From Macrostomum lignano (lineage: Eukaryota), in contig NIVC01003237.1 of assembly GCA_002269645.1 (NCBI GenBank), positions 13,621 through 77,620 on the forward strand: DNA of 64,000 nucleotides. Reading direction: 5' to 3'. Below are positions 443-61,730 of this stretch, in pieces (position 1 is the stretch's first letter; every line of letters starts with the position of its first letter). The translations under genes were made by a program, and so were the position numbers. The notes beneath the pieces were generated by a model, which saw only the letters and a program-made list of their open reading frames with translations, was not told where the DNA came from and did not search any database.

Positions 443-3400
443 GCCTGGATTCACCTCGAAGGTGAGGTTGAGCCAAAAAAGCTGGCCTGCGAAATCTGCG
501 GCAGCAAGTACAGGATGAAATCCAGGCGTTTTTTCCGGGTATGGACCGCCTTTGCTTGCTTGTGTCTGGGGACAGCAGTCATCACCCAGTTCAGTCACAC
601 TGCTCAGTCACCAGCCAGTTCAATCACACCCCAGTCACCAGCCAGTTCAGTCACACCCCAGTCACCACCCAGATCAGTCACTGCCCAGTCACCAGCCAGT
701 TCAGTCACACTGCCCAGTCACCAGCCAGTTCAGTCACACTGCCCAGTCACCAGCCAGTTCAGTCACACTGCCCAGTCACCAGCCAGTTCAGTCACACTGC
801 CCAGTCACCAGCCAGTTCAGTCACACTGCCCAGTCACCAGCCAGTTCAGTCACACTGCCCAGTCACCAGCCAGTTCAGTCACACTGCCCAGTCACCACCC
901 AGATCAGTCACTGCCCAGTCACCAGCCAGTTCAGTCACACTGCCCAGTCACCAGCCAGTTCAGTCACTGCCCAGTCACCAGCCAGTTCAGTCACACTGCC
1001 CAGTCACCAGCCAGTTCAGTCACACTGCCCAGTCACCAGCCAGTTCAGTCACACTGCCCAGTCACCAGCCAGTTCAGTCACACTGCCCAGTCACCAGCCA
1101 GTTCAGTCACACTACCCAGTCACCACCCAGATCAGTCACTGCCCAGTCACCACCCAGATCAGTCACTGCCCAGTCACCAGCCAGTTCAGTCACTGCCCAG
1201 TCACCAGCCAGTTCAGTCACACTGCCCAGTCACCAGCCAGTTCAGTCACACTGCCCAGTCACCAGCCAGTTCAGTCACACTACCCAGTCACCACCCAGAT
1301 CAGTCACTGCCCAGTCACCACCCAGATCAGTCACTGCCCAGTCACCAGCCAGTTCAGTCACACTGCCCAGTCACCACCCAGATCAGTCACTGCCCAGTCA
1401 CCAGCCAGATCAGTCACTGCCCAGTCACCAGCCAGTTCAGTCACACTGCCCAGTCACCACCCAGATCAGTCACTGCCCAGTCACCAGCCAGTTCAGTCAC
1501 TGCCCAGTCACCACCCAGATCAGTCACTGCCCAGTCACCAGCCAGTTCAGTCACACTGCCCAGTCACCAGCCAGTTCAGTCACACTGCCCAGTCACCACC
1601 CAGATCAGTCACTGCCCAGTCACCAGCCAGTTCAGTCACTGCCCAGTCACCAGCCAGTTCAGTCACACTGCCCAGTCACCAGCCAGTTCAGTCACACTGC
1701 CCAGTCACCACCCAGATCAGTCACTGCCCAGTCACCAGCCAGTTCAGTCACACTGCCCAGTCACCAGCCAGTTCAGTCACACTGCCCAGTCACCACCCAG
1801 ATCAGTCACTGCCCAGTCACCAGCCAGTTCAGTCACTGCCCAGTCACCAGCCAGTTCAGTCACACTGCCCAGTCACCAGCCAGTTCAGTCACACTGCCCA
1901 GTCACCACCCAGATCAGTCACTGCCCAGTCACCAGCCAGTTCAGTCACACTGCTCAGTCACCACCCAGATCAGTCACTGCCCAGTCACCAGCCAGTTCAG
2001 TCACTGCCCAGTCACCAGCCAGTTCAGTCACACTGCCCAGTCACCAGCCAGTTCAGTCACACTGCCCAGTCACCAGCCAGTTCAGTCACACTGCCCAGTC
2101 ACCAGCCAGTTCAGTCACACTACCCAGTCACCACCCAGATCAGTCACTGCCCAGTCACCACCCAGATCAGTCACTGCCCAGTCACCAGCCAGTTCAGTCA
2201 CACTGCCCAGTCACCACCCAGATCAGTCACTGCCCAGTCACCAGCCAGTTCAGTCACTGCCCAGTCACCAGCCAGTTCAGTCACACTGCCCAGTCACCAC
2301 CCAGATCAGTCACTGCCCAGTCACCAGCCAGTTCAGTCACACTGCCCAGTCACCAGCCAGTTCAGTCACACTGCCCAGTCACCACCCAGATCAGTCACTG
2401 CCCAGTCACCAGCCAGTTCAGTCACTGCCCAGTCACCAGCCAGTTCAGTCACACTGCCCAGTCACCAGCCAGTTCAGTCACACTGCCCAGTCACCAGCCA
2501 GTTCAGTCACACTGCCCAGTCACCAGCCAGTTCAGTCACACTACCCAGTCACCACCCAGATCAGTCACTGCCCAGTCACCACCCAGATCAGTCACTGCCC
2601 AGTCACCAGCCAGTTCAGTCACTGCCCAGTCACCAGCCAGTTCAGTCACACTGCCCAGTCACCAGCCAGTTCAGTCACACTGCCCAGTCACCAGCCAGTT
2701 CAGTCACACTACCCAGTCACCACCCAGATCAGTCACTGCCCAGTCACCACCCAGATCAGTCACTGCCCAGTCACCAGCCAGTTCAGTCACACTTCCCAGT
2801 CACCACCCAGATCAGTCACTGCCCAGTCACCAGCCAGTTCAGTCACTGCCCAGTCACCAGCCAGTTCAGTCACACTGCCCAGTCACCACCCAGATCAGTC
2901 ACTGCCCAGTCACCAGCCAGTTCAGTCACTGCCCAGTCACCACCCAGATCAGTCACTGCCCAGTCACCAGCCAGTTCAGTCACACTGCCCAGTCACCAGC
3001 CAGTTCAGTCACACTGCCCAGTCACCACCCAGATCAGTCACTGCCCAGTCACCAGCCAGTTCAGTCACTGCCCAGTCACCAGCCAGTTCAGTCACACTGC
3101 CCAGTCACCAGCCAGTTCAGTCACACTGCCCAGTCACCACCCAGATCAGTCACTGCCCAGTCACCAGCCAGTTCAGTCACTGCCCAGTCACCACCCAGAT
3201 CAGTCACTGCCCAGTCACCAGCCAGTTCAGTCACACTGCCCAGTCACCAGCCAGTTCAGTCACTGCCCAGTCACCACCCAGATCAGTCACTGCCCAGTCA
3301 CCAGCCAGTTCAGTCACACTGCCCAGTCACCAGCCAGTTCAGTCACACTGCCCAGTCACCAGCCAGTTCAGTCACACTACCCAGTCACCACCCAGATCAG

Positions 3401-3833
3401 TCACTGCCCAGTCACCAGCCAGTTCAGTCACTGCCCAGTCACCAGCCAGTTCAGTCACACTCTCACTCGCCCCTCAACCCCGCAGCCCCGCCTCGTGGTG
3501 AATCGAAAATCGCCCATCCTGGCTTTGATTTCGATCGCCCTGATCATGTTCGCCTGCGGCGCTGTGGCCTCAATGCTGAAATACTCGCATCTGCTAGACA
3601 AAACGCCGATGTCTGAGCTGCACATCTTCAATCCGGGTCTAATACTGAAGCTGCTGGGCCTGCTGCTGCTGTCCGTGTTCTGCTGCGCAGCCGTGCTGTG
3701 CCTGCTGTGCGCGGCTTTCTGCGCCGAGGACTCCCTGCTGAGCTGCGAGCTGACGCGTCGGGAGCTCCGACTAGTTGACCATCGGTGTCCTGCCGATCGT
3801 AGCGACGACACCGCTGACGTCATGGCCGTATGA
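443..3833 (+). CDS. 3' part of a MARCH-family (RING-CH + 2 TM) membrane E3 ubiquitin ligase; exons 443-538 and 3486-3833; earlier exons lie outside the window
   Basis: Exon 443-538 (cag| ... |gtatgg) encodes AWIHLEGEVEPKKLACEICGSKYRMKSRRFFR, the W..CEIC..Y end of a RING-CH finger. It joins in phase 0 to the acceptor at 3485 (ccccgcag|), giving PRLVVNRKSP and two hydrophobic helices (ILALISIALIMFACGAVASML; LILKLLGLLLLSVFCCAAVLCLLCAAF), with the stop at 3833. RING-CH followed by two TM helices is the MARCH architecture. Confidence 0.75.
576..3460. repeat. 2.9-kb intronic minisatellite of 27/29-bp variants (CAGTCACCAGCCAGTTCAGTCACACTGCC / CAGTCACCACCCAGATCAGTCACTGCC)
   Basis: Directly visible; fills almost all of intron 539-3485. 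Confidence 0.97.
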
Positions 3834-17403: not shown

Positions 17404-20130
17404 GCACCAACACCAACAGTCGCAGCAGCAGCCTCAGCCTCCAGTCCAGGCGGCTGTCCCCAGTAGCGCAGCGGATTCGCCGCTAGACCTGACAATTCCC
17501 AAAGCTGCCGTCGCGTCGCTAGCCAAGGCGAACGGACCGGCGACTTTGTCGGCGTCCGTCTGCGGCCCGGTGCCACTGGATTTGTCCTACAATTCTGGCA
17601 GGTCGACTGGCGCATCGAGGATCGATCGGTCGCGTAAGCAGCGTCGCTCTTTGCCGCCCTCGATGCTGACGGCTCCACAGCAGCAGCGACAGCAGGGGGT
17701 GCCGATACTCAGCCCGCTGCTCTTCCCCAGCCCGACTCTGCCAACAACGACGTCAACGTCTGCAGCAGCTCCGGCCTCGTCCAGCTCAGTCGGCGTCCAT
17801 CATCAGCTGGCCGATCATCTGCCCCGTGTGGACGCCTCGCCGGAGCCTCCAGGCGTCCCGGGCTGCTCAGATTCGCAGCATTCGGCGCCAGGAGCCGTCG
17901 ACGATCCTAGCGGCGGCCGCGGCGGCCGCCAGCCGGTGACCACCTGCCACCAGTGCGGCCGCGGCTTCGTCTGCCAGGGCGACATGAACGCCCACTTCGA
18001 GCTGGAGCACCTGGCCGCGCTAATGGGCGAATTCGACCATGGCAAGTCTTGGAAATCCTCCGCCGTGGAGAACAAGGAGCTCAACGTTGAGGCGACCATG
18101 GTGCGGCTGGAGAACGGCGACACGATCGGGTTCAAGTGCCCCGAGTGCGACTACTTTGCCAAGTGGCCCACCGAGCTGCAGAAGCACATCATGGTGCACT
18201 CCAGCGCCAGGCCGCACGTGTGCGTCGTCTGCGGCTGCACCTACAAGTGGAAGTGGGACCTCGGCAGACACTTCGACCGATCGCACGAGTCGGCCGCAAT
18301 GCCCAATCCGTATAAGAAGAACTCAGCCAGGCCGTCCAGCGGCGGCGGCGGCGGCTACCCGAGCAGCGCATCAGCGGCTGCGACCTCCTCGACAGGCCGG
18401 TCAACTCCAAGGGCGCCGCGTCAAAGTGGCGGCAGCGGCAGTAGCCGTCTGGCTTCTCCATCGGCTGGCGGCTCAACGACGGCCGAGCTGCTGGCGTACT
18501 ATTCCACTCCAGCCCGGTCCGCTGCCATGGCTGCCGCTGCTGCGTCTGCCGCTGCCGCCGCCGCCGCAGCTGCCGTCGGTGAGGCCGCTGTGTCCGCCGC
18601 GGCGTCGCCGTCTGAGCCCCGAGAATTGTCGCCTCCGCCTCCGCGGCTGGTGCTGAAGTCCGAGGATGAAGACGGCGTCAATGATGACTCACAGCTGCAG
18701 CAGCAGCTCGCCTGTCCTATCTGTGGCGCACAGGTGAGTACCACTCATTTGGGGGGGGCGGGGTGAAATCCTAAACTTCACAATCCCCAAACTTCACAAT
18801 CCCCCAAACTTCACAATCCCCCAAACTTTACAATCCCCAAACTTCACAATCCCCCAAACTTTACAATCCCCAAACTTTACAATCCCCAAACTTCACAATC
18901 CCCAAACTTCACAATCCCCCAAACTTTACAATCCCCAAACTTCACAATCCCCAAACTTTACAATCCCCAAACTTCACAATCCCCAAACTTCACAATCCCC
19001 AAACTTCACAATCCCCCAAACTTTACAATCCCCAAACTTCACAATCCCCCAAACTTTACAATCCCCCAAACTTTACAATCCCCAAACTTCACAATCCCCC
19101 AAACTTCACAATCCTCCAAACTTCACAATCTCCAGAACTTCACAATTTCCCAAACTTCACCATTAGCTCGAATATACAATTTATTACGTTATCAAATTTG
19201 CAGACTCGCTGGCCGGACGAGCTGAAGACTCACGTTGTCGGGCACAGCGAGTTCCGGCCCTACCGCTGCAGCGGCTGCCCCTTCGCCAGTCGCGAGCGCT
19301 CCGAAGTTGTCGCTCACATCGAAGCCTCCTGCTGCGAACCCGCTGGCGCCGGGCACCACCCAGCCGACTCGACGGTGCTGTGCGAGCCGCCGCCGCTCCT
19401 CGTCGGGGTGTTCGCCGACGGCGCCGAGGTGGCCGACTACGCAGAGAGGGCCGCTAGGCGTCAGCGGTTGCAGCAGTTCGATGGCGATGACGAAGAGGAC
19501 GAAGCAGCAACGGCCGGAGAGGCAGAAGAGGCGAATGACGACTCGAGAGATGAAGATGCCAAGGTGAGACTTGGTGAGCCTGTGCACTGTTGCTTCCCTT
19601 TATAGCCTTATATCTTCATAAGTGGTTTGATTTCTGCTCATGAAGCTCTTCTAGTTTAGGTTCATTTCTGCTCATAGAGCTGTTCTAGTTTAGATCCATT
19701 TCTGCTCATAGAGCTGTTCTAGTTTAGGTTCATTTCTGCTCATAGAGCTGTTCTAGTTTAGGTTCATTTCTGCTCATAGAGCTGTTCTAGTTTAGGTTCA
19801 TTTCTGCTCATAGAGCTGTTCTAGTTTAGGTTCATTTCTGCTCATAGAGCTGTTCTGTTCATTTCTGCTCATTTAAATATTCTACAGTTCCATAGCTAAA
19901 AATCGAAGGCTAACATCAAGTTCCGTCACCTTTACCAGGCCACTTCGCTGCTCAAATCAGAGCCCGGCTCGCCAGCAGAAGCTCCATCTTCCTCGGTCAG
20001 GGAGCCGCCTGAGATGCCCCGAGTTGGCAGTCCAACCGTTGCCAAGCGGCTTGACGCGCCGCGGTCTTGTGACAGCAGCAGCAGCAACAGCGGCAGCGGC
20101 GGCTCTAAAGAGCTTGCAAATCAATTTTAA
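15863..20130 (+). CDS. C2H2 zinc-finger transcription factor, 846 aa, with poly-Q tracts and two PxDL(S/T) CtBP-binding motifs; exons 15863-16040, 16923-18733, 19204-19563, 19939-20130
   Basis: All introns are GT-AG with consistent phases (1,0,0); exons total 2541 nt = 847 codons. Fingers: CHQC..H..EH, CPECDYFAKWPTELQKHIMVH, CVVCGCTYKWKWDLGRHFDRSH, and CPICGAQ|TRWPDELKTHVVGH (a C-x2-C-x12-H-x3-H finger rebuilt only by splicing), plus CSGC..H..SC. Linkers are SARPHVC and SEFRPYRC. Confidence 0.88.
16644..16785. repeat. 23-bp repeat x4 (TACACGAGAGGGGCGCCATAATA) followed by a hAT-like terminus; probable MITE remnant in intron 1 of the zinc-finger gene
   Basis: Period 23; ends CCCCCCCCCCTTAAATCAGCCCCTG (reverse complement starts CAGGGGC). 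The partner end was not found. Confidence 0.55.
18768..19162. repeat. 15/16-bp intronic minisatellite (CCCCAAACTTCACAAT)
   Basis: Fills intron 2 of the zinc-finger gene. Confidence 0.95.
19630..19872. repeat. 34-bp intronic minisatellite (ATTTCTGCTCATAGAGCTGTTCTAGTTTAGGTTC)
   Basis: Period 34 (19681 and 19715); lies in intron 3 of the zinc-finger gene. Confidence 0.93.
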
Positions 20131-23552: not shown

Positions 23553-25139
23553 TTAAGAGGGCGAGTTGCCTTCCAGTTCGCGTTTCTCATAGTGACTAAA
23601 GTCGTCAAAGATGCTGGTACTGTGCCTATAGGACCTGATGATGCCGAGCACCTGGCGGCCCTGCTCAATAGGCACGTTTGTGCAGTCGCGAGAATTAGTC
23701 ACCGGCTTGTTCTCGTTAGTTGCCACCCGGACGTGGCGCAATTGACTATTTGGCACGTCCTTAACGTAAATCCATTTGATTTTGAACTCGCCAAGCCATT
23801 TATCCTGGCACCAGACGCCAGCATTTTTATTAACGTCAACCTGCGTTATCATCTGGGCTACGCCGCAGAAATGGCCGGACCCGTTCACTGAGAACAGCAG
23901 ATAGACTCGGCCGCCACGATTCGCTGTCCGACTGAAAGCGCCGTTGAGCACTTCGTTGCCGCGCTTTGTACTGCACCAAATCGAATATTTAATAGCTCGA
24001 TGAATATCGTCTTCGCTGTAGCTTTTAATAACGTAGAACTCTGAGTTGTCTGGCACGTCGTGCTTAGCCGGATTAATGTCCTGCTCAAGCTGGCGCAGCT
24101 GCTCCTCCGATGCAGCCGGCACGGGCTCCAGCGATTGCAACTGGCCACGATTGCCAGATGCTGGCTGCTGCTGCTGGTATTGCGGCACGTAGCCCTGACC
24201 TGGAGCCATGGAAGCCGCATTGCCGCGAGCCGGCTGCTGCTGCTGTTTCCCAGCGGCGTGACCTACAGCCAGGCCGCCAGTGCCTTTGCCTAGCGCCTTC
24301 GGATTGCCAGCCTTGTTGCCAATAGCAACCGGCACGGCCACTGGCTCGCCGGGCGCCGAGCCGCCAGACGCCGGTTTTTGAGCACCGCCGCTGGGTCCGA
24401 CAGGCGCCTGAGAGGCGGCAATTTTGGCCCAAGTTTTTGGAGCGGCGGCGCCGGCTGTCGACGTGCTCAAGGCTGGGAAGTCGACAGCTGAACTGTCGGA
24501 TTGCTGCTGCTGCTGCTGCTGCTGTTGAACGCTAAGACCGGCGATGCCCTGCTCAAGGATCGCCATCGAGTCTGCCGTGCCGTTGTTAGCGGACTGCGCG
24601 CCGGCTACAGCGGAGGCGGCTGTAGCAGCGGGCTGGTGCGGCATCGGCGCGTAGCCAGCAGGAGCCGGCGGCGGCGGCGGCGGCGGATGCGCGTAGCCGG
24701 GCCACACAGTCAAGTCGCCACTCTCGAAGCTGTTAGCAGCCGCGGCGGCTGCGGCAGCTGCAACGGGATTCCACATGCCGCCACCGTATCCGGTCTGATG
24801 CGGCGAGGCCTGCATATAGCCTGGGTAGCCGTACGAGTTGCCCTGATAGTAGCCCTCGGGGCTGTACTGCTGCTGCTGGGCGTAGTCGGCCGCCGGAGCG
24901 CCGGTTGACCAAACGGATCCAACGTCGACGCCGATTTGGCCGCCAGAGTAAGCAAAATTCTGCATCAGATAGGGCGCCTGGTGTTGACTGTAGTCTCCCA
25001 TGGCCTGGTTGTTTAGCATCCGTTCTGTTAGGTTCAAGTCTGCATGAATTTCATAAAAAGAGTTGCTTAGATGAGACAAACCTTTGAAGCTTGACGGGAT
25101 GGATGGAAGTCGGCTATGGTCTCCATTCGAACACCGCAT
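23553..25139 (-). CDS. ythdf: YTHDF-family m6A reader: low-complexity Q/P/A/G/Y N-terminus and a C-terminal YTH domain in one uninterrupted coding exon. Start is either ATG 25139 or ATG 25019, just after an AG acceptor at 25026-25025
   Basis: YTH hallmark sequences [72 protein letters not shown] and [14 protein letters not shown]. The three aromatic-cage Trp residues are intact. Confidence 0.95.
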
Positions 25140-27886
25140 AATCAAGGACTACTAAATTCTACAGCAGCAAAATCTTATTGCTTATCTCACTCAGACAAAC
25201 TTTGCTGGGAAAGTTTGCTATCAAAAAACAGCAATTATACATAGTCACTATCCTATTCTATAAAATTAGATTATTTATAATTGATGCTGTCTCTTGCTAA
25301 TAATGTTTTTTATATAACTAATTGCAAAGATGAATTTTTGTGAATAGTAGTATATAAGTAGGTGTATAATATACATAGATATGACCAATATACAAATTAG
25401 TATAAATAATTTATTGTCCATTGAAAACTATACAGTGTATATAGTAAATGCTATATGTAGGTCTATACATGTGCAATAGCCAGCTGGCTGGTGAGAGGCC
25501 AAGCCAAGGTAAATCACAAAAAATGCCTACCCAAAAATATAGATGTAACACTAGTTAGATGACAAGGCATCTAGCCTTAAGTCAAAGTTACTCCTATTGT
25601 TTACCCAAAATTATACTAATTTTTGCTTAGGTTCTTTTATAGGTAAGTCACATTTTTGGTCAAAGAGTAAGTTGCACTGCCAGTATAAATCAGGGGGGGT
25701 TGCACATGTATGTTGGTCTAGACCCAAAACTCTTACCCTATGCCTATGTGAACAATAAACCTAAAAATGTTGCTCTTTTAGAGTTAAGACCTAGGTCTTT
25801 TTAGTCAGTGATACTTGGGGCACGGAATGGCATATTTAAAAAACTAATTTAAATATTTAACAAAAAAGCCAAGCACATGAATAAGATATAATCATTTATC
25901 ACTTCTATTACTAGACATTAAAGGTAGTGAGAAACTAAAAATTGCCAATAATTTTTGGAATGTTTGGAAATCAAATCTTAATAATTGAATATAGTATAGT
26001 TGAATTAATTTGATATGTTTATTCTTTCTGTAATAAGGGGCATAGGCCTCAATTTTTACTTCTTAGAGAGTTGCATTTTAAAAGATTACTATTGTTATAT
26101 TACACAAATATTAAAAACATTTCTTATATTCAATATATTTTATATACTATATATCATTGTTTGTTTTAAAAAGTAATAGAAAAACTTTACTATAAAAGGA
26201 AGCCAGTTGAAAGCCAAGAAAAATAAACTTGTTTTCTTTTCCTTTTCTTGTTTAGTTTTTCAAAGCTTTTTTACTTTGTATACTCTACTAGGTATTCTAT
26301 TTGGAGACAAAAGTCAAATCAGCTTCAGGGCTTATAATTGCTCTCATGTTACTTATTTTGAGTAGTAGATAGCGACTTAAGAATAGCCCCAAGATTGGGA
26401 GAATTAAATCCATTCTCAAAGAATGAGATACCTAGATTTAGAATCTAAGAAATTGCTTTTAAAAGGCAGAAATCCTACCATAGGATAGAATAGTCTAGTA
26501 TCAAGTCTAAGAAACCTACCTCAAGGCAGAAAACCTAGTAAGTAAACTGTGAACCTCTGATCCTAGGAATGCCTAGGACTAAGAGAATAAAAATCCTTAG
26601 AGGAGTATAGGGATAGAGTAGACAGTGCCATAAGACTACTTAGGCTAGAAGTATAGTACATATACATATGCTACCACATACATACCCAATACCCATTTGA
26701 CCCATCCAAACTAGACAGGTGAAATGGCCACTGGCCAAGTAAGTTGCAAAATCAAAAATGCAAAAAAATGAAAAATTAGGGGAAGAAAGAAAGGAGATGA
26801 AGAGAAAGGAGAATAAAGGAAAGAGACAAGAGAGAGGGAAAAGAGGAGAGAGAAAGAGAAAGAGAGAAGAAAAGAGAAAAAGGCAAGAAAAGTCATATAC
26901 AAAATGAAAATTAAGTCACAATCGGGGGAACTAAATTACAATTGAGAGGAACTAAGTCATAAATCTGGATAAAACTAAGTCGCACTGGATGGATAAAATT
27001 TTGAGGTTAGGCATGTATGTGCTACCAATAGATAAATTCATGCGCTACCAATAAAAGTATATAACTAACAGCAGTAAGATCATTTCAAAGGATAGAAATT
27101 AGCCCTATTACAACTTTTGGTATCTGATCAGCAACAGAATAATTTAGATAGAAAGCAATTATTAGTACAAAACTTGGTGACAGATTAGTTGTTTGGGTGA
27201 CAAGATGTTTTGGTAACAGTTGTTTCTGTGACAAGCAAAAATCAGCAATAGCCATTTTGTTTTTAAATAGTAAAATTACTTGCAAATATTAAGGGATATC
27301 AAAACTTAAACTTTTTGTAATTTTCTGCAATCGTTGAATATTGTTTTGTTTATTTACAATTCGTAGTTGTGATCTTTTGAATTTATATTTTTTCTAATCC
27401 TATTCCAATTGTGTCTAGTGAATATCTCTACTTTTCTCATAGTTAGCATTTTATGAAGATTCTCTATAGATTTATGGTTTCTATGTCTGAATGACTAAAT
27501 ATTCTAGGACAATTCAAAATTATCTGCACAGAAAGAAAACCATTAGTTTGGTTTCTTTTCCTACATATAATAATCTTTCAATGGAAATTTTCAAATATGA
27601 ATGAAATATAAATCTTAACAAAATAACTTCAAGCTGATATTATGAAGCATCTCCTGTCACTAAAATGACTAGTTAATGAAGACAAAGTCTTTTCGCCCCA
27701 GTGAGCTTTGGGGTTGGAATTTTATAATGCCTAGTGTTGTATAGATTATTTAAAGACTTTCAAGGCATTATTAACGCTGATGCTCCTAATATTTTGTGTC
27801 GTGTCATATATAAAGTTAGCCTAATAGATAAAGTAGGGCGAGAGTTGTAAAATGTCTCTAATGTCAAATGATTTATAGGAAGGGAA

Positions 27887-28664
27887 TAGGGATGTCGATT
27901 CCCCAGGGAATTATCTTATTGGGGACCCCGGTGAAAAGAAAAAAATAAGTAAAAACAACAGATAACTTAGATTGTAAGTGGAATTTTTTAAACTTTGATT
28001 TAAGCTTTGTACTACATGTTTAAGGCACAAGGGTAAAAACTTTAAACAATGTTTTTTAAAACTGTATTTGACAATGTGGCATCACGAAATTGTGTGCGCA
28101 CCTTTGTTGGAAAGGTGCATTTGTTAGAATGCATGCTAAACAGCTACGCTCGTGAGAGGATAATTAATGAATGAGACTGTTTTTATAATCAGAATTTTTA
28201 TTTCTTGCAGATATATGTAAATCACCATTTTGTCCTTGTCTAATAGGGAGTATATGTATGACACCCCCCTATGCATCAGTGCCTGACGCAGGACGCAGCA
28301 CTACGCCTGTGTCAAATGCGTCAAGCCGTCAATGCAGACCAACACAGTAGTCAGTAAGGCTTCTTTTTCCTGATGGGTTTCTTTTCTACATGCAATTTGC
28401 TTTATTGAATGATTAATAGTGAAAAAACAATCAAATGTGTGTTATGTTTGAAATACATGTAATATAAATAAGCAATTATGTGGTAAAAGAGCATAGACAG
28501 AGTTTCAATCAGCTTTCTGTGAATCAATTTCTTATTTTAATGGCAAAAATTAAGTTTCAAATGCATTTTTTAATATTTTTTCTCCCCAGGGTCCCCGGTT
28601 CAATTCCCCGGGGAGTATTCCCCGACAAGCTCCCCAGGGAGCACTCCCGGGGTCAACATCCCTA
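27887..28664. mobile_element. Non-autonomous hAT-type DNA transposon, 778 bp
   Basis: TIRs TAGGGATGTCGA / TCAACATCCCTA (11 of 12 match), flanked by the exact 8-bp TSD GAAGGGAA at 27879-27886 and 28665-28672; CCCCGGGG-like subterminal motifs. Confidence 0.9.
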
Positions 28665-29363
28665 GAAGGGAAACTACGAGCATAAGTTCTGCAACACAAA
28701 TACAAGTAGCTAAGCATTAATAGATGCACTGCACCGATAAAATGTAATGGAATTGCTTGAATCACCGACACCAAGACCCATAAAACTGGAGAAACTGGCA
28801 GGATATAGCAGATACATCATACATGTAGGTCAGAATCAGAAGTGATAGGTAGGTGGGTCAAGTGATCATGGGTTCAACCTCAATTGTATTATTCCTTCTT
28901 AATCTTATGCAATTAATTGTACATTTGGTATGAAGTAACAGTAATTATCCTTGACCATGCTAGAGTAAAGACAAGTCAAAGTCAAGTTAATAAAAATAGA
29001 CACACACAGTGTAACAATAACAATGGTTTAAAGCCATTTTTCTTGTCAATGTTTGTCTTTGTATATACATGTACATTGGGAAGACTTATCTGGACCCAAT
29101 CCCTTCTTATTCTACATGTACACTATTTTGGGTATGGGGGTTAGAGTTGGGCCGTCTGACACCCCCCCTACCATAGTGGACTGGAGAGAAGCACATGCTA
29201 TCGCTATTGGCTAGCCTGTCATTCTCTTTCTCTTTACCTTTTGTCTTGTGTAGGGTACACTATGCAATGCACAAGGCCCAACTTTCCACTAAAGGAAGGT
29301 TCATATAGTCCGCCTATGGGCCTCTCGCTTTCGCGTACACTCAAGGCCACTCACTCTCAACAC

Positions 29364-29659
29364 CATACATGCGCAACCTCCAAAATTCGGTCAGCCGTGC
29401 GACTTGGTTTTAACAAAAAATGCGACGTAGTTTTTGGCCAAAAATGCGACTTACCTGTGAAAGAAACCTTAAGCAAAATTAACGCAATTTTGGGTAAACG
29501 GCAGGAGTAACTATGACTGTCTTATAAGGGCTAAATGCCTCGTCATCTAATTAGTACTACATATGATTCTTTTGGGTGGGCATTTTTGCGACTTACCTTG
29601 GTTGGCCGCCAAATCGGTCGGCCGGATCGGCCGACTCGGCCGACTGTTGCGCATGTATG
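29364..29659. mobile_element. 296-bp MITE (8-bp TSD class, hAT or P superfamily) containing a 28S rRNA fragment
   Basis: Perfect 14-bp TIRs CATACATGCGCAAC (29364-29377) and GTTGCGCATGTATG (29646-29659); exact TSD CTCAACAC at 29356-29363 and 29660-29667. Confidence 0.92.
29492..29555 (+). other. 64-bp fragment of the conserved 28S rRNA R2/I-PpoI/Pokey target region (not a functional rRNA gene)
   Basis: GGGTAAACGGCAGGAGTAACTATGACTGTCTTATAAGGGCTAAATGCCTCGTCATCTAATTAGT against the recalled eukaryotic 28S consensus GGGTAAACGGCGGGAGTAACTATGACTCTCTTAAGGTAGCCAAATGCCTCGTCATCTAATTAGT: 56/64 identical ungapped. Confidence 0.92.
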
Positions 29660-30765
29660 CTCAACACCAACCACTAGAGGCTTGTTTTAAATAATCAATT
29701 GATAATATTAAATGTACACTTGAAAGCTTGCTTTGGATCCTAACAGAAGGGGGAGAAAGTGGCCAAGGCCACCACACCCCACAAGGCAAGCAGGCCAGCC
29801 AGAGTGCGATAACGAATGACAAAAAATAGAAAAGTACAATTTACACTTCAACTTTCAATACAATAAATACAATAATAGGTACAGTATTAATGACAGTGTA
29901 TTTTCACACAAAGTAGCTACGTTCAAACCACCACCATGTAAACAGCTAAAATTTTACTGTTTTTGAAATTTTATAAAATTTAACACATCATTTTAGATAT
30001 TGAAAACTTTTAAAGGAGGGTATTACTGTTGCATGTGACTATAAAATTGTGGTAGGTATAGCTGATGATGAAACTGGTGATTGGTATCTAGCTTTTTTGA
30101 TAACTTAGCCGGTTAGACCCCGAAATAGCTATTGTAATTTGTAACACTGGAGCCAAATATAAATACAATGGAGCAATTAGTTTCTCTCAAATCTGTCTCT
30201 GCCAGTGCCAGTTTAGTCCATAGTAAGTAACCAAAGTAAAATACCCATTAGTGAGTCCTGTTTCTAATGTTTATAAATATTAAGCTTCAATTTACTTTTG
30301 GCACAGTATGCAATTTTGAAAATTCACCTTAACAACGGTTTGCACCAGTAGGAAAGCAACTATTTTGTTGTTGGAAATCGGATTAAGCAGTCAAAAGAGT
30401 GTATTTCTATGAAAAAATGTACTTTTTTTCCATTTTTTCAATTATTTAAATAGGTTTCGCTTTTTCAATAAAAAATCATCACAGTACCTTAAAATACAGT
30501 TAGTTTGGAATTAAATGACGGTGTTGAATTGTTTCTTCCATATTCCAAAAATTATAAAGAGCACTTTTCCTCAAATCAGTTTGAGATCATGATTTTTAGT
30601 CTTTTATCGATAACTTTCTGATTTCAAATGTTTAAGAATTAAAAACTTCCACACTTGTGCATCTTTGAATTGCGTATCGATTGGTGCATAGTATGTATGC
30701 TTAACTATTAGCAGTATAGAAAAAAATGCAAAAAACTGTAAAAGTACATTATCAATTTTTGCATT

Positions 30766-31056
30766 GGCTAGAGTTCTGGCACCGGAACCCATTTTCTAAC
30801 AGCTATGGATCCGGCAGTGGTATTCCAGTAGTGCAATTTATGGGTATGTATAATATAGCAGAAACATTTTACTTTTTTTAACGGGTTGTTGATATTGGGA
30901 TTTTGCTCAAGATAAGATCAAAACAAAACGATGAGATTCAAAACAAGATACTTCTAAGTTCTGATGTTCAAAGACTTCATTAGTAGATAACTGCCTGCAA
31001 AAGACTGCCAGATCCATAGCCATTAGAAAACAGGTTCTGGTGCCAGAACTCTAGCC
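30766..31056. mobile_element. MITE-like element, 291 bp, with ~53-bp imperfect TIRs
   Basis: GGCTAGAGTTCTGGCACCGGAACCCATTTTCTAACAGCTATGGATCCGGCAGT (30766-30818) is the near reverse complement of 31004-31056. No unambiguous TSD. Confidence 0.7.
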
Positions 31057-32314
31057 ATAACCTTTATAAAGACATAATCTTAAGACAAACATTTTAACTG
31101 AAGCCTGTTCCTTTTTTCTACAATGAATCCATACAAAACTATACTTGTTAAATAGGGCCTAGATCAGATTCTTTTCTTTAAAATGACACCTCACTTGTGA
31201 AATTTGCTCTTGTAGTTTTGAAGTTAAAACAGTTTTTGTAAGATTTTTCTTGTCAATTTTTTGATGCACACATCTCATATTATTATATTTGTCATAAGCC
31301 AGACCACCCAATGCGCTTCGCGCATTGGCTGGCTGTTTGTTTCTCATGCTTGGCACTTTGTGCCTCGCGCATTTGCTCCACTCACCCCACAAGGGTTTGT
31401 GGGTTTTGCGGAGCTCACTGGGAACTAGGGCCTATACTTTCATTTATTTTTTTATCAAAACTATACACTTTTTGCAATTGTTCACTAAATTAGGATAAGC
31501 AAAATTGTTATTAGCAAATTACAAATTTATAAGTTTGGCAAGCAAATATTATAGACCTAATTCAAATCTTTATGGCAAACTATAACAAGTGTTTATAACC
31601 CTATCTAATATCCTAGGTATTTATTATCATACTCTATATAGTCTATACAAGGTTTTACAAGGTATTTGTAAATATAGTGCTAAAAGAAAAGATTATATTA
31701 GAGTATCTATAATTAAATACTTAAATAATTAAATATTCGTTTAATTCCAACACCCACCCCCCACCACCCTTGAATAGAGGGCGAAATAATTCCGGAAATA
31801 ATTAAACGAACGAAACTTGAAGATTGCCAATCATTTTTGTCTGTAAAAATCCAATTTAAAATCAACCCTGATGCTTAGCTCAATGCTGTCAGCTATTAGG
31901 AGCTATTGAAAAACAAAGTGCTACCATGGCTAAATCAGCACTACTTAAGTGACCAATATATAATATTCTAGCAACAGCAAGATGGTGCACTTTCATATAC
32001 TGCAATAACCATATAGACCTTCCTGTGAGAAAATTTTGCTAATTACTAGCCAAAGTACTTCTGGTCATCTTAATCTACTGGAATATTATTTCTAAGTACA
32101 AGTAGAGCACAATGTGTTCATTCTTTAGAATGAGCAGCAATTATACAAAAGAAAAAGAAAATTCCGAAATGATTGTAATTTTGTGTAAATAAGTACTTTT
32201 TAAATTTTATTCAGAATCAGAAAATTAACAAATGCCACGAATGCAATTTAACAAATAGGAAAAATCAAAATGGTTTCTAGTCTATGGGCATGAAGTTTTT
32301 TCACCTTTTTTCAG

Positions 32315-32477
32315 TGCTTTATTTTAAGCTTTTTTTGCTTTATTTTATTAAATATGAATCATGAAATTTGTTATTCTGCATAGATTCTCTTCATGTGAAG
32401 AAGAATGTTAAATTTGTCCAGGACACTTCCTAATTTATATTTAATAAAATAAAGCAAAAAAAGCTTAAAATAAAGCA
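32315..32477. repeat. Perfect 41-bp AT-rich inverted repeat with an 81-bp spacer (foldback or MITE-like)
   Basis: 32315-32355 is the exact reverse complement of 32437-32477. Confidence 0.85.
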
Positions 32478-38344: not shown

Positions 38345-41300
38345 CGAAGGATTAGAGAGAGAGAGAGGACAGCGGTGCTCACCGAAGGATTAGAGAGAGG
38401 ACAGCGGTGCTCACCGAAGGATTAGAGAGAGGACAGCGGTGCTCACCGAAGGATTAGAGAGAGAGGACAGCGGGGCTCACCGAAGGATTAGAGAGAGAGA
38501 GGACAGCGGTGCTCACCGAAGGATTAGAGAGAGAGGACAGCGGTGCTCACTGAAGGATTAGAGAGAGAGAGAGGACAGCGGTGCTCACCGAAGGATTAGA
38601 GAGAGAGGACAGCGGTGCTCACCGAAGGATTAGAGAGAGAGGACAGCGGTGCTCACTGAAGGATTAGAGAGAGAGGACAGCGGTGCTCACCGAAGGATTA
38701 GAGAGAGGACAGCGGTGCTCACCGAAGGATTAGAGAGAGAGGACAGCGGTGCTCACCGAAGGATTAGAGAGAGAGAGAGGACAGCGGTGCTCACCGAAGG
38801 ATTAGAGAGAGAGAGAGGACAGCGGTGCTCACCGAAGGATTAGAGAGAGAGGACAGCGGTGCTCACCGAAGGATTAGAGAGAGGACAGCGGTGCTCACTG
38901 AAGGATTAGAGAGAGGACAGCGGTGCTCACTGAAGGATTAGAGAGAGGGGACAGCGGTGCTCACTGAAGGATTAGAGAGAGGACAGCGGTGCTCACTGAA
39001 GGATTAGAGAGAGGACAGCGGTGCTCACTGAAGGATTAGAGAGAGGACAGCGGTGCTCACCGAAGGATTAGAGAGAGGACAGCGGTGCTCACTGAAGGAT
39101 TAGAGAGAGGACAGCGGTGCTCACTGAAGGATTAGAGAGAGAGGACAGCGGTGCTCACCCAAGGATTAGAGAGAGGACAGCGGTGCTCACTGAAGGATTA
39201 GAGAGAGAGGACAGCGGTGCTCACCCAAGGATTAGAGAGAGGACAGCGGTGCTCACCCAAGGATTAGAGAGAGGACAGCGGTGCTCACCGAAGGATTAGA
39301 GAGAGAGGACAGCGGTGCTCACCGAAGGATTAGAGAGAGAGAGAGGACAGCGGTGCTCACTGAAGGATTAGAGAGAGAGAGAGGACAGCGGTGCTCACCG
39401 AAGGATTAGAGAGAGAGGACAGCGGTGCTCACCGAAGGATTAGAGAGAGGACAGCGGTGCTCACTGAAGGATTAGAGAGAGAGAGGACAGCGGTGCTCAC
39501 TGAAGGATTAGAGAGAGGACAGCGGTGCTCACTGAAGGATTAGAGAGAGGACAGCGGTGCTCACCGAAGGATTAGAGAGAGGACAGCGGTGCTCACTGAA
39601 GGATTAGAGAGAGGACAGCGGTGCTCACTGAAGGATTAGAGAGAGGACAGCGGTGCTCACTGAAGGATTAGAGAGAGGACAGCGGTGCTCACCGAAGGAT
39701 TAGAGAGAGGACAGCGGTGCTCACTGAAGGATTAGAGAGAGAGAGGACAGCGGTGCTCACCGAAGGATTAGAGAGAGGACAGCGGTGCTCACCGAAGGAT
39801 TAGAGAGAGGACAGCGGTGCTCACTGAAGGATTAGAGAGAGAGAGGACAGCGGTGCTCACTGAAGGATTAGAGAGAGGACAGCGGTGCTCACCGAAGGAT
39901 TAGAGAGAGGACAGCGGTGCTCACTGAAGGATTAGAGAGAGAGAGGACAGCGGTGCTCACTGAAGGATTAGAGAGAGAGAGGACAGCGGTGCTCACTGAA
40001 GGATTAGAGAGAGGACAGCGGTGCTCACTGAAGGATTAGAGAGAGGACAGCGGTGCTCACCGAAGGATTAGAGAGAGGGGACAGCGGTGCTCACTGAAGG
40101 ATTAGAGAGAGGACAGCGGTGCTCACCGAAGGATTAGAGAGAGGACAGCGGTGCTCACTGAAGGATTAGAGAGAGAGAGAGGACAGCGGTGCTCACTGAA
40201 GGATTAGAGAGAGGACAGCGGTGCTCACCGAAGGATTAGAGAGAGAGGACAGCGGTGCTCACTGAAGGATTAGAGAGAGGACAGCGGTGCTCACCGAAGG
40301 ATTAGAGAGAGGACAGCGGTGCTCACTGAAGGATTAGAGAGAGAGGACAGCGGTGCTCACTGAAGGATTAGAGAGAGAGAGAGGACAGCGGTGCTCACTG
40401 AAGGATTAGAGAGAGAGAGAGGACAGCGGTGCTCACCGAAGGATTAGAGAGAGGACAGCGGTGCTCACTGAAGGATTAGAGAGAGAGAGGACAGCGGTGC
40501 TCACTGAAGGATTAGAGAGAGAGAGAGGACAGCGGTGCTCACCGAAGGATTAGAGAGAGAGGACAGCGGTGCTCACCGAAGGATTAGAGAGAGGACAGCG
40601 GTGCTCACCGAAGGATTAGAGAGAGGACAGCGGTGCTCACCGAAGGATTAGAGAGAGAGGACAGCGGTGCTCACCGAAGGATTAGAGAGAGGACAGCGGT
40701 GCTCACCGAAGGATTAGAGAGAGAGGACAGCGGTGCTCACCGAAGGATTAGAGAGAGAGGACAGCGGTGCTCACCGAAGGATTAGAGAGAGGACAGCGGT
40801 GCTCACTGAAGGATTAGAGAGAGAGAGGACAGCGGTGCTCACTGAAGGATTAGAGAGAGGACAGCGGTGCTCACTGAAGGATTAGAGAGAGGACAGCGGT
40901 GCTCACCGAAGGATTAGAGAGAGGACAGCGGTGCTCACTGAAGGATTAGAGAGAGGACAGCGGTGCTCACTGAAGGATTAGAGAGAGGACAGCGGTGCTC
41001 ACTGAAGGATTAGAGAGAGGACAGCGGTGCTCACCGAAGGATTAGAGAGAGGACAGCGGTGCTCACTGAAGGATTAGAGAGAGAGAGGACAGCGGTGCTC
41101 ACCGAAGGATTAGAGAGAGGACAGCGGTGCTCACCGAAGGATTAGAGAGAGGACAGCGGTGCTCACTGAAGGATTAGAGAGAGAGAGGACAGCGGTGCTC
41201 ACTGAAGGATTAGAGAGAGGACAGCGGTGCTCACCGAAGGATTAGAGAGAGGACAGCGGTGCTCACTGAAGGATTAGAGAGAGAGAGGACAGCGGTGCTC

Positions 41301-42668
41301 ACTGAAGGATTAGAGAGAGAGAGGACAGCGGTGCTCACTGAAGGATTAGAGAGAGGACAGCGGTGCTCACTGAAGGATTAGAGAGAGGACAGCGGTGCTC
41401 ACCGAAGGATTAGAGAGAGGGGACAGCGGTGCTCACTGAAGGATTAGAGAGAGGACAGCGGTGCTCACCGAAGGATTAGAGAGAGGACAGCGGTGCTCAC
41501 TGAAGGATTAGAGAGAGAGAGAGGACAGCGGTGCTCACTGAAGGATTAGAGAGAGGACAGCGGTGCTCACCGAAGGATTAGAGAGAGAGGACAGCGGTGC
41601 TCACTGAAGGATTAGAGAGAGGACAGCGGTGCTCACCGAAGGATTAGAGAGAGGACAGCGGTGCTCACTGAAGGATTAGAGAGAGAGGACAGCGGTGCTC
41701 ACTGAAGGATTAGAGAGAGAGAGAGGACAGCGGTGCTCACTGAAGGATTAGAGAGAGAGAGAGGACAGCGGTGCTCACCGAAGGATTAGAGAGAGGACAG
41801 CGGTGCTCACTGAAGGATTAGAGAGAGAGAGGACAGCGGTGCTCACTGAAGGATTAGAGAGAGAGAGAGGACAGCGGTGCTCACCGAAGGATTAGAGAGA
41901 GAGGACAGCGGTGCTCACCGAAGGATTAGAGAGAGGACAGCGGTGCTCACCGAAGGATTAGAGAGAGGACAGCGGTGCTCACCGAAGGATTAGAGAGAGA
42001 GGACAGCGGTGCTCACCGAAGGATTAGAGAGAGGACAGCGGTGCTCACCGAAGGATTAGAGAGAGAGGACAGCGGTGCTCACCGAAGGATTAGAGAGAGG
42101 ACAGCGGTGCTCACCGAAGGATTAGAGAGAGAGGACAGCGGTGCTCACCCAAGGATTAGAGAGAGAGGACAGCGGTGCTCACCCAAGGATTAGAGAGAGG
42201 ACAGCGGTGCTCACCGAAGGATTAGAGAGAGAGGACAGCGGTGCTCACCCAAGGATTAGAGAGAGGACAGCGGTGCTCACTGAAGGATTAGAGAGAGAGG
42301 ACAGCGGTGCTCACCCAAGGATTAGAGAGAGGACAGCGGTGCTCACCCAAGGATTAGAGAGAGGACAGCGGTGCTCACTGAAGGATTAGAGAGAGGACAG
42401 CGGTGCTCACCGAAGGATTAGAGAGAGGACAGCGGTGCTCACTGAAGGATTAGAGAGAGAGGACAGCGGTGCTCACCCAAGGATTAGAGAGAGGACAGCG
42501 TTGCTCACTGAAGGATTAGAGAGAGAGGACAGCGGTGCTCACCCAAGGATTAGAGAGAGGACAGCGGTGCTCACCCAAGGATTAGAGAGAGGACAGCGGT
42601 GCTCACTGAAGGATTAGAGAGAGGACAGCGGTGCTCACCGAAGGATTAGAGAGAGGACAGCGGTGCTC
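38345..42668. repeat. 4.3-kb minisatellite: constant GGACAGCGGTGCTCAC(C/T)GAAGGATTA plus variable (GA)n
   Basis: 26-bp constant part followed by a GA tract of variable length. Confidence 0.97.

Positions 42669-55061: not shown

Positions 55062-56188
<1,127 letters not shown>

Positions 56189-60096: not shown

Positions 60097-61730
<1,634 letters not shown>

What the first reader, a model, noticed from the sequence alone, without database searches (positions are those of the whole stretch)
29356..29667. MITE carrying the 28S rRNA site targeted by R2, Pokey and I-PpoI
Seen: a complete 296-bp element with perfect 14-bp TIRs and an exact 8-bp TSD. Its centre (29492-29555) is a 64-bp copy of one conserved 28S segment, framed by direct TGCGAC(TTACC) motifs. 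Established: this segment is the target of R2 retrotransposons (AAGG/TAGC), the I-PpoI homing site (CTCTCTTAAGGTAGC) and the TTAA site of Daphnia Pokey. Inference: capturing exactly this window out of kilobases of rDNA is unlikely to be random. The MITE could act as a mobile landing pad that disperses rDNA-specific elements outside the rDNA, as a decoy for their endonucleases, or as a source of rRNA-complementary small RNA.
Basis: partly seen in the sequence, partly recalled or inferred. Interest (0 to 1): 0.85.

Follow-up and report, generated by a model that had tools for sequence, protein, structure and literature searches.

The report
Flatworm MITE with a 28S-derived core
This is a real, multi-copy miniature DNA transposon of the flatworm Macrostomum lignano that once picked up about 120 bases of the 28S rRNA gene, but the famous R2/I-PpoI/Pokey target inside it is mutated in every copy, so it looks like a passenger, not a landing pad.

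Summary
Window 29364-29659 is a 296-bp element with 14/14 TIRs and an exact 8-bp TSD. Its centre matches eukaryotic LSU rRNA (Rfam RF02543, model positions 2199-2320, E 2.8e-7).

The host is Macrostomum lignano. The element belongs to a family: five independent core-bearing copies lie in 113 kb of host DNA. Four are full length, three with exact and different 8-bp TSDs and one with 7/8. A sister element (26677-27019) shares both arms but carries a TC-rich centre instead.

The 28S piece is therefore a roughly 120-nt cargo between conserved transposon arms. It was captured once, as in "Pack-TIR" elements.

The functional reading fails. No copy has CTCTCTTAAGGTAGC, AAGG/TAGC or the TTAA at that position. 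All share derived changes (...TT[T/A]TAAGG(G)CTAAAT...). This 18-nt window is the most variable part of the core (12/18 against 14/46 variable columns, p=0.011). No copy is interrupted there.

Still untested are genome-wide copy number, the autonomous partner (hAT-like or P-like), the host's own 28S and R2, and small RNAs.

Verdict: a real and mildly interesting new MITE family with an rDNA-derived passenger.

The parts
29356..29363 (.). Left copy of the 8-bp target-site duplication, CTCAACAC
   Evidence: Exact repeat of 29660-29667
29364..29377 (+). Left terminal inverted repeat, CATACATGCGCAAC
   Evidence: 14/14 complementary to 29646-29659. The same TIR, with 0-3 mismatches, ends every family copy
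29378..29456 (+). Left arm with three direct GCGAC(T/G)TA motifs (GTGCGACTTGG, ATGCGACGTAG, AAAAATGCGACTTACCT). These are presumed transposase-binding subterminal repeats
   Evidence: The first 70 nt align to the core-less sister element c3 (0/500 shuffles). The inner motif is 0.92 conserved among copies
29457..29579 (+). Cargo: a roughly 120-nt fragment derived from the 28S rRNA gene (domain IV), in sense orientation
   Evidence: Rfam RF02543 at 29445-29568, model positions 2199-2320, E 2.8e-7. Copy L2b hits the same model positions. The cargo is bounded by the arm homology with c3
29492..29555 (+). Best-preserved 64 nt of the cargo, 56/64 identical to the 28S consensus without gaps
29519..29536 (+). 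Degenerate remnant of the R2 / I-PpoI / Pokey target: CTGTCTTATAAGGGCTAA where 28S has CTCTCTTAAGGTAGCCAA
   Evidence: It is the most variable segment of the core among copies (0.59-0.62 pairwise identity; 12/18 variable columns)
29580..29645 (+). Right arm: GCATTTTTGCGACTTACCTTGG followed by TCGGCCGA-type palindromic repeats
   Evidence: Homologous to the right arm of c3 (1/500 shuffles)
29646..29659 (-). Right terminal inverted repeat
29660..29667 (.). Right copy of the 8-bp TSD, CTCAACAC
25464..25712 (-). Copy 2 of the family. It is older and CpG-decayed, and carries the 28S-like core with a 7-nt deletion at the target-site remnant. Its TSD is TAGACCAA/TAGACCTA (7/8) if 2 bp were lost from one terminus
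   Evidence: 78% identity to copy 1 over positions 58-244. nhmmer E 9e-74. Retained at 98% in the paralogous locus, L001 9371-9618
26677..27019 (-). Sister element c3 (343 bp). It has the same TIR type and both arms but a TC/GA-rich centre in place of the 28S cargo. Its exact 8-bp TSD, TGCTACCA, lies at 26669-26676 and 27020-27027
   Evidence: Also present in L001

Best explanation
This is one copy of a non-autonomous cut-and-paste DNA transposon (MITE) family of Macrostomum lignano. An as yet unidentified transposase would recognise the 14-bp TIRs and the repeated GCGACTTA / GGCCGA subterminal motifs. Insertion makes an 8-bp target duplication.

Between the two conserved arms sits a roughly 120-nt cargo derived from domain IV of the 28S rRNA gene. 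The cargo was acquired once, in the ancestor of this family. The most likely route is filler DNA copied in by template switching or gap filling when an internally deleted element was repaired. This is the 'Pack-TIR' route. Transposition then amplified it passively.

The cargo is a passenger. The R2 / I-PpoI / Pokey target inside it was already altered in the common ancestor of the sampled copies and has decayed further since. The element therefore does not act as a landing pad for rDNA-specific elements.

Shown: element anatomy, family membership, independent insertions, rRNA origin of the core, shared loss of the target motifs.

Inferred: the capture mechanism, the motifs as transposase-binding sites, and the absence of function.
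For: - Host and family. The window's YTH ORF is 98% identical to BOX15_Mlig004902g1. Core-bearing copies are at window 29364-29659 and 25464-25712, and at L002 17707-18004, 20567-20834 and 12428-12594. A paralogous duplicate of copy 2 lies in L001.
- Independent insertions. The TSDs are exact, 8 bp and all different: CTCAACAC, AATCTGTG, GCCTAGAT. The sister element has TGCTACCA.
- rRNA origin. RF02543 hits the same model positions, 2199-2320, in two copies.
- Arms plus cargo. Sister element c3 shares the left arm (0/500 shuffles) and the right arm (1/500) but has a TC-rich centre.
- Single capture and loss of the target. All copies share A for G in GGCAGGAG and ...AAGG(G)CTAAAT... for AAGGTAGCCAAAT.
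- The target window is the least conserved part of the core: 0.59-0.62 against 0.79-0.91; 12/18 against 14/46 variable columns, Fisher p=0.011.
- No copy is interrupted at that position.
- Precedent. Pack-TIRs in animals are mostly hAT and arise by gap filling or template switching (PMC8277862). rDNA modules inside TEs are generally ascribed to modular reshuffling (PMC10946416).
Against: - Only five independent copies were sampled, and one locus was chosen because it holds a copy.
- No empty site and no autonomous partner were found, so mobility and superfamily rest on TIR and TSD anatomy alone.
- The host's own 28S and R2 could not be fetched, so the donor was compared only with the Rfam consensus.
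- Conservation within the cargo is uneven. The two blocks best kept among copies (GGGTAAAC...TGAC and ATGCC...TTAGT) are those most like 28S. They overlap the upstream and downstream half-sites that R2 N-terminal domains bind (PMC11204384). A pure-passenger model does not predict this, although five copies make the pattern weak.
- The 5' half of the cargo is much more diverged from 28S than the 3' half, and this is unexplained.
Confidence: 0.75

Rival explanations
1. Non-random capture without present function. The donor was an rDNA unit or fragment made available by endonuclease damage at this hot spot (R2 nicking, or breaks at the site). That would explain why this segment in particular became filler DNA. 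The clustered changes at the site would be repair scars.
For: Differences from 28S cluster at the site. A +2/-2 change confined to a 10-nt window keeps the 25-nt stretch at its original length in four copies. R2 lineages occur in Platyhelminthes (PMC5035012, PMC13188248).
Against: The fragment spans the site and does not end at it. The canonical R2 scar is loss of the GG between the two nicks (TTAA^GG^TAGC, PMC13486585), but the copies keep GG and lack TA. No R2 of M. lignano was examined. The clustering was noticed after the fact, in a T/A-rich stretch prone to slippage.
Confidence: 0.1
2. Decoy or sponge. The dispersed copies keep the flanking sequences that R2 protein binds but have lost the nick site. 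They would titrate R2 protein, or another rDNA-site-specific nuclease, without being cut.
For: The two blocks best conserved among copies (0.89-0.91 and 0.79-0.86) overlap the tested upstream (-50 to -9) and downstream (-8 to +34) half-sites bound by R2 ZF1-Myb domains (PMC11204384). The nick-site window is degenerate.
Against: The same blocks are simply the most recognisable 28S parts. There are only five copies. All copies carry a substitution inside the upstream half-site (GGCGGGAG to GGCAGGAG). Nothing shows that the host benefits or that a flatworm R2 protein binds. Old copies decay freely, with 11/13 CpGs lost in copy 2.
Confidence: 0.04
3. Mobile landing pad. The copies attract R2, Pokey-like or homing-endonuclease elements to sites outside the rDNA.
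For: The core derives from the right 28S region.
Against: AAGGTAGC, CTCTCTTAAGGTAGC and the TTAA at that position are absent from all five copies. The site window is the most variable part. No copy is interrupted there.
Confidence: 0.03
4. The cargo did not come from the 28S gene directly. It came from a 28S-like sequence carried by another element, for example an R2 3' UTR and junction. This would explain the uneven similarity to 28S.
For: Some R2 lineages carry diverged 28S-like sequence in their 3' UTR, directly followed by genuine 28S (PMC5035012). In the MITE the 5' part is far more diverged than the 3' part.
Against: The change from low to high similarity lies about 36 nt upstream of the R2 site, not at it. 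No R2-specific sequence flanks the cargo. No M. lignano R2 was available for comparison.
Confidence: 0.05
5. Source of rRNA-related small RNAs. Copies transcribed in antisense would yield small RNAs complementary to 28S.
For: One copy (L2a) lies antisense inside the terminal exon and presumed 3' UTR of an annotated gene model, so family sequence reaches mRNAs. The RNA fold is more stable than shuffles, z = -4.9.
Against: Only the 14-bp TIRs and short local palindromes pair. It is not a long-hairpin MITE. No small-RNA data could be examined.
Confidence: 0.03

Closest known systems
Pack-TIR elements of animals (TIR DNA transposons, mostly hAT and Tc/mariner, that captured host sequence; Tan et al. 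2021, PMC8277862)
   Same: TIRs and a TSD frame a non-transposon, host-derived insert between transposon arms. Several copies have different TSDs, so the chimera itself transposed. One copy contributes to a chimeric transcript or gene model.
   Different: The cargo is an rRNA-gene fragment, not genic or UTR sequence. Multicopy Pack-TIRs were rare in that survey (4 of 370), whereas this family is frequent in the 113 kb sampled here. The parental locus and breakpoint microhomology could not be checked.
Pokey / mPok of Daphnia (a piggyBac transposon and its MITEs)
   Same: A DNA transposon or MITE whose internal region contains rDNA-derived sequence. It is linked to the same 28S hot spot (PMC10946416, Tables 1 and 2).
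   Different: Pokey makes TTAA duplications, inserts into the 28S site and carries IGS repeats. This family makes 8-bp TSDs, lies in ordinary intergenic and intronic DNA, and carries 28S coding sequence.
SINE28 and the 5S-derived SINE3, Cassandra and Ajax elements
   Same: Mobile elements that carry an rRNA-gene-derived module (PMC4994717, PMC10946416).
   Different: Those are retroelements. The 5S module supplies a Pol III promoter, which is a clear benefit. Here the carrier is a class II MITE and no benefit of the module is evident.
hAT-type MITEs (Ds-like internally deleted elements)
   Same: 8-bp TSD, short TIRs, several short subterminal repeat motifs, small size, no coding capacity.
   Different: The TIR starts CATAC, not the usual CAG/TAG (YARNG). 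Only one of five TSDs fits nTnnnnAn. No hAT transposase partner was identified. A P-superfamily partner (8-bp TSD, CA-initial TIR) is equally open.
R2 lineages with 28S-like sequence in the 3' UTR (Kojima et al. 2016, PMC5035012)
   Same: A mobile element carries a diverged copy of 28S sequence from around the R2 site.
   Different: Those are R2 retrotransposons still residing in rDNA, and the 28S-like piece affects their own targeting. Here a DNA-transposon MITE sits outside the rDNA.

Membership tests
MITE (non-autonomous TIR DNA transposon) | Terminal inverted repeats | tested here: met
   14/14 in copy 1. The same TIR, with 0-3 mismatches, is found at both ends of four full copies and at the retained end of a truncated one
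MITE (non-autonomous TIR DNA transposon) | Target-site duplication of constant length that differs between copies | tested here: met
   8/8 in copy 1, L2a, L2b and c3, and 7/8 in copy 2. All sequences differ
MITE (non-autonomous TIR DNA transposon) | Small, non-coding and multicopy | tested here: met
   249-298 bp. The longest ORF wholly inside copy 1 is 35 aa. Five independent copies lie in 113 kb. Genome-wide number not measured
MITE (non-autonomous TIR DNA transposon) | Empty site or insertion polymorphism showing mobility | tested here: inconclusive
   The joined flanks of copy 1, L2a and L2b find no paralogous empty site in the DNA at hand. The paralogous locus L001 lacks the whole 3.8-kb stretch around copy 1
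hAT superfamily | 8-bp TSD | tested here: met
hAT superfamily | TIR beginning YARNG and target consensus nTnnnnAn (recalled from the Repbase classification, not checked in a paper here) | tested here: not met
   The TIR begins CATAC. Only CTCAACAC fits nTnnnnAn. AATCTGTG and TGCTACCA do not fit, and GCCTAGAT and TAGACCAA fit half
hAT superfamily | Autonomous partner encoding a hAT (DDE plus hAT dimerisation domain) transposase with the same ends | not testable with these tools
   There are no unpaired TIRs or longer elements in the 113 kb. The host genome cannot be searched by DNA here
P superfamily | 7-8-bp TSD, TIR beginning CA (CANRG, recalled from memory), THAP-type transposase partner | tested here: inconclusive
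   The TSD length fits. CATAC matches 4 of 5 positions. The partner was not found
Pack-TIR (Tan et al. 2021) | Non-TE host sequence between the arms of a TIR element, with TIRs and TSD retained | tested here: met
   The arms are shared with the core-less element c3. The centre matches RF02543
Pack-TIR (Tan et al. 2021) | Identified parental locus and breakpoint microhomology | not testable with these tools
   M. lignano rDNA could not be fetched. Only the Rfam consensus was available
Functional R2 / I-PpoI / Pokey target site | Intact CTCTCTTAAGGTAGC, including TTAA^GG^TAGC | tested here: not met
   The five copies read, over the corresponding stretch: CTGTCTTATAAGGGCTA, CTGTTTTATTAAGCTAA, CTCTCTTTTAAGGGCTA, C-------TTAAGGCTA (7-nt deletion) and CTTGATTTTTAAGGCTA. 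Nick positions are from PMC13486585
Pokey / mPok (piggyBac) | TTAA target duplication and residence in the 28S gene | tested here: not met
   TSDs are 8 bp and not TTAA. The flanks are ordinary intergenic or intronic DNA
rRNA-derived SINE (SINE28-like) | Retroposon anatomy: no TIRs, a 3' A-rich or LINE-derived tail, TSDs of variable length | tested here: not met
   TIRs and a fixed 8-bp TSD are present. There is no A-tail at either end of the element or of the cargo

The most novel reading that the evidence does not exclude
The dispersed copies act as decoys for R2 protein. The family keeps the upstream and downstream 28S half-sites that R2 ZF1-Myb domains bind and has lost the nick site. Thousands of copies could then soak up R2 protein, or misdirect it to harmless sites, and so damp R2 activity on the rDNA. 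This would be a transposon-borne defence, or a case of competition between two mobile elements.
Probability: 0.04. Interest if true: 0.75.

Novelty: new member of a known kind. Interest (0 to 1): 0.3.

Why it matters
If the ordinary reading is right, this adds a clear, multicopy animal example of a TIR transposon that captured host sequence. Such multicopy cases were rare in the one broad survey (PMC8277862).

As far as a 2024 review table shows (PMC10946416), it would also be the first DNA-transposon MITE with a 28S coding fragment.

It has practical consequences for M. lignano genomics. Dispersed 28S-like pieces can create false rDNA signals in read mapping, rRNA filtering and probe design. 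At least one annotated gene model ends in a copy of this family.

It would matter much more only if the conserved flanks of the dead target turn out to bind R2 protein. Nothing here shows that.

Tried and rejected
Searches that found nothing:
- Rfam at gathering thresholds over the whole window.
- Rfam in E-value mode over L001 plus L002 together, because the search space was too large. Copy 2 alone also gave no hit.
- A protein search with a LINE fragment from 62.9-63.4 kb, meant to reach many host loci. This spent one of the three searches.
- An exact look-up of the 35-aa ORF inside the element.
- Two metagenome scans, one with a MITE-specific 23-mer of the core and one with a 19-mer of the right arm. 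The collections within reach seem to hold no other Macrostomum DNA.
- A search for paralogous empty sites using joined flanks.
- A search for further TIRs or an autonomous copy in the 113 kb.

Ideas considered and dropped:
- The 12-bp direct repeat TGCGACTTACCT as the TSD of a nested retroposed 28S piece. Rejected because the core-less sister element c3 has the same right-arm motif, the motif recurs three times in the left arm, and there is no A-tail.
- The changes at the site as a canonical R2 scar. Rejected because R2's two nicks flank GG, which the copies keep (PMC13486585).
- A long-hairpin MITE. Rejected because only the TIRs and local GC palindromes pair.
- Chance resemblance to rRNA. 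Rejected by E 2.8e-7 and E 5.8e-5 at identical model positions in two copies.

Full report
**1. The observation**

Window 29364-29659 is a 296-bp element.
- Its ends, CATACATGCGCAAC and GTTGCGCATGTATG, are 14/14 complementary.
- It is flanked by an exact 8-bp direct repeat, CTCAACAC, at 29356-29363 and 29660-29667.
- The TIR 14-mer with up to 2 mismatches occurs 4 times in the window, against 0.39 expected.
- A 12/12 direct repeat, TGCGACTTACCT, sits at 29445-29456 and 29587-29598.

At Rfam gathering thresholds the window has no hit. A focused scan finds LSU_rRNA_eukarya (RF02543) at 29445-29568 on the + strand, model positions 2199-2320, 36.5 bits, E 2.8e-7.

The element reads CTGTCTTATAAGGGCTAAAT where 28S reads CTCTCTTAAGGTAGCCAAAT.

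**2. Host and related sequence**

The window is animal DNA full of minisatellites. Its YTH-domain ORF (23553-25145, minus strand) is 98% identical to BOX15_Mlig004902g1 of Macrostomum lignano.

That protein's contig (L001, NIVC01001886.1) is a paralogous locus, 94-99% identical in blocks.

A six-frame translation of the element found a single protein in the large collection. It is BOX15_Mlig018981g1 of M. lignano, and its locus is L002 (NIVC01003072.1).

**3. It is a family**

BLASTN and an nhmmer profile find core-bearing copies at the following places.

| Copy | Location | Note |
|---|---|---|
| copy 1 | window 29364-29659 | the element in question |
| copy 2 | window 25464-25712 (minus strand) | 78% to copy 1 over the centre; its duplicate is L001 9371-9618, 98% identical |
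| L2a | L002 17707-18004 | full length, 90% to copy 1 |
| L2b | L002 20567-20834 | full length |
| L2c | L002 12428-12594 | 5'-truncated |

The full-length copies have 8-bp TSDs of different sequence:
- CTCAACAC (copy 1), AATCTGTG (L2a) and GCCTAGAT (L2b), all 8/8.
- TAGACCAA/TAGACCTA in copy 2, 7/8 if 2 bp were lost from one end.

These are independent insertions by a cut-and-paste mechanism with an 8-bp staggered cut.

Leaving aside copy 1 and L2a, which brought their loci in, three further copies lie in about 92 kb. That suggests thousands of copies genome-wide. This is only an order-of-magnitude extrapolation.

**4. Anatomy: arms plus cargo**

A third element lies at window 26677-27019, with an exact TSD of TGCTACCA at 26669-26676 and 27020-27027.
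- It has the same TIR type.
- It shares the left arm of copy 1, including GTGCGACTTAG-type motifs (0/500 shuffles reach the score).
- It shares the right arm, GCATTTTTG...GCAACTTACTTGGCC (1/500).
- Its centre is a TC-rich tract, with no rRNA similarity.

So the 28S-like stretch, about 29457-29579, is a cargo between transposon arms. Sister elements exist without it.

Within the core-bearing family there are two subfamilies: copy 1 with L2a, and copy 2 with L2b. They differ in their subterminal regions (0.47-0.52 mean identity). They share the TIRs (0.87-0.89), the inner arm motifs (0.92 and 0.82) and the cargo.

**5. State of the famous site**

L2b independently hits RF02543 at the same model positions (27.9 bits, E 5.8e-5).

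All copies share derived differences from 28S:
- A for G in GGCAGGAG.
- ...AAGG(G)CTAAAT... in place of AAGGTAGCCAAAT.

The capture therefore happened once, and the common ancestor of the sampled copies had already lost the R2 nick context. That context is TTAA^GG^TAGC, with nick positions as given in PMC13486585.

None of the five copies has AAGGTAGC, CTCTCTTAAGGTAGC or the TTAA at that position.

The 18-nt site window is the least conserved part of the core. Its mean pairwise identity is 0.59-0.62, against 0.89-0.91 and 0.79-0.86 for the blocks on either side. It has 12/18 variable columns against 14/46, Fisher p=0.011. The segmentation was chosen after looking at the data, and there are only five copies.

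Copy 2 has a 7-nt deletion there. No copy is interrupted by foreign sequence at the site.

**6. Mechanism**

The arms-plus-cargo layout, the single origin and the later spread with distinct TSDs match the 'Pack-TIR' picture. In that picture an internally deleted TIR element acquires filler DNA by gap filling or template switching and is then mobilised in trans (PMC8277862).

rDNA is a plausible donor simply because it is abundant. A 2024 review ascribes rDNA modules in TEs mostly to modular reshuffling, and it lists no DNA-transposon MITE with a 28S coding piece (PMC10946416, section 'Ribosomal DNA in TEs' and Table 2).

The superfamily is open.
- The 8-bp TSD, short TIRs and multiple short subterminal motifs look hAT-like.
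- The TIR starts CATAC, not YARNG.
- Only one of five TSDs fits nTnnnnAn.
- A P-type partner would fit as well.
- No autonomous copy or unpaired TIR lies in the 113 kb.

**7. What the passenger model does not explain**

The two cargo blocks best conserved among copies are also those closest to 28S. They overlap the upstream (-50 to -9) and downstream (-8 to +34) half-sites tested for binding by R2 N-terminal domains (PMC11204384).

R2 lineages exist in flatworms, including non-specific ones (PMC5035012, PMC13188248).

A 'binding kept, nick site lost' decoy is therefore not excluded. With five copies and no binding data it stays a low-probability reading.

The changes at the site are not the canonical R2 scar. 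That scar would remove GG, whereas the copies keep GG and lack TA.

The 5' half of the cargo is far more diverged from the 28S consensus than the 3' half. Without the host's own 28S or R2 sequences this cannot be interpreted.

**8. Verdict**

The element is real and the family is real. The 28S origin of the core is real and ancestral to the family.

The proposed roles as landing pad, decoy or small-RNA source are, respectively, contradicted, untested and unlikely, and untested.

It is a new MITE / Pack-TIR-type family with an unusual rDNA cargo. It is of modest interest.

Noticed in passing
L002 17705-17797 (inside MITE copy L2a, 17707-18004): The last 31 residues and the stop codon of the annotated M. 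lignano protein BOX15_Mlig018981g1 (a CARD/Roc GTPase) are encoded by the antisense strand of a family copy. The MITE therefore supplies a terminal exon of a gene model. A truncated copy (L2c) lies in an intron, about 15 bp upstream of the next exon match.
   Followed up: partly
window 25464-25712 compared with 29364-29659; L002 copies: The older copies have lost nearly all CpGs to TpG/CpA: copy 2 lost 11/13 and 8/8, L2c lost 5/7. At non-CpG sites only about 14% are transitions. This looks like methylation-driven CpG decay of transposons, which would be notable in a flatworm.
   Followed up: partly
window 25464-25712: Copy 2 sits about 320 bp upstream of the start of the YTH-domain ORF (23553-25145, minus strand). 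The paralogous locus L001 retains it at 98% identity. It may lie in the gene's promoter or 5' UTR.
   Followed up: no
window 30765-31057 and 32315-32477: Two further MITE-like structures lie in the same AT-rich stretch. One has 54-nt arms, 89% complementary, 185 nt apart. The other has 51-nt arms, 94% complementary, 61 nt apart. Neither is related to the family studied.
   Followed up: no
window 27020-31457 compared with L001 8070-5331: The paralogous loci differ structurally exactly at the end of sister element c3. About 3.8 kb, including copy 1, is present only in the window. L001 has about 2 kb of other sequence with an inverted duplicate of c3's left flank. This may be a rearrangement associated with a transposon end.
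   Followed up: partly
window 576-3461, 38360-42668, 55062-56188, 60097-61728 and others: Tandem repeats are unusually dense: a 29-bp unit x103, a 32-bp unit x129, (CTAT)282, (GACA)408 and many minisatellites. They create long spurious ORFs.
   Followed up: no
window 62476-63735 (minus strand): Frameshifted fragments of a LINE-type retrotransposon (RT C-terminal region and RNase H) run off the window end. A search with one fragment found no relative in the protein collection.
   Followed up: partly
L002 16476-23157: The C-terminal Roc/Ras exons of BOX15_Mlig018981g1 are tandemly duplicated three to four times downstream of the gene. MITE copies L2a and L2b are inserted at different relative positions in two of the units.
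   Followed up: no
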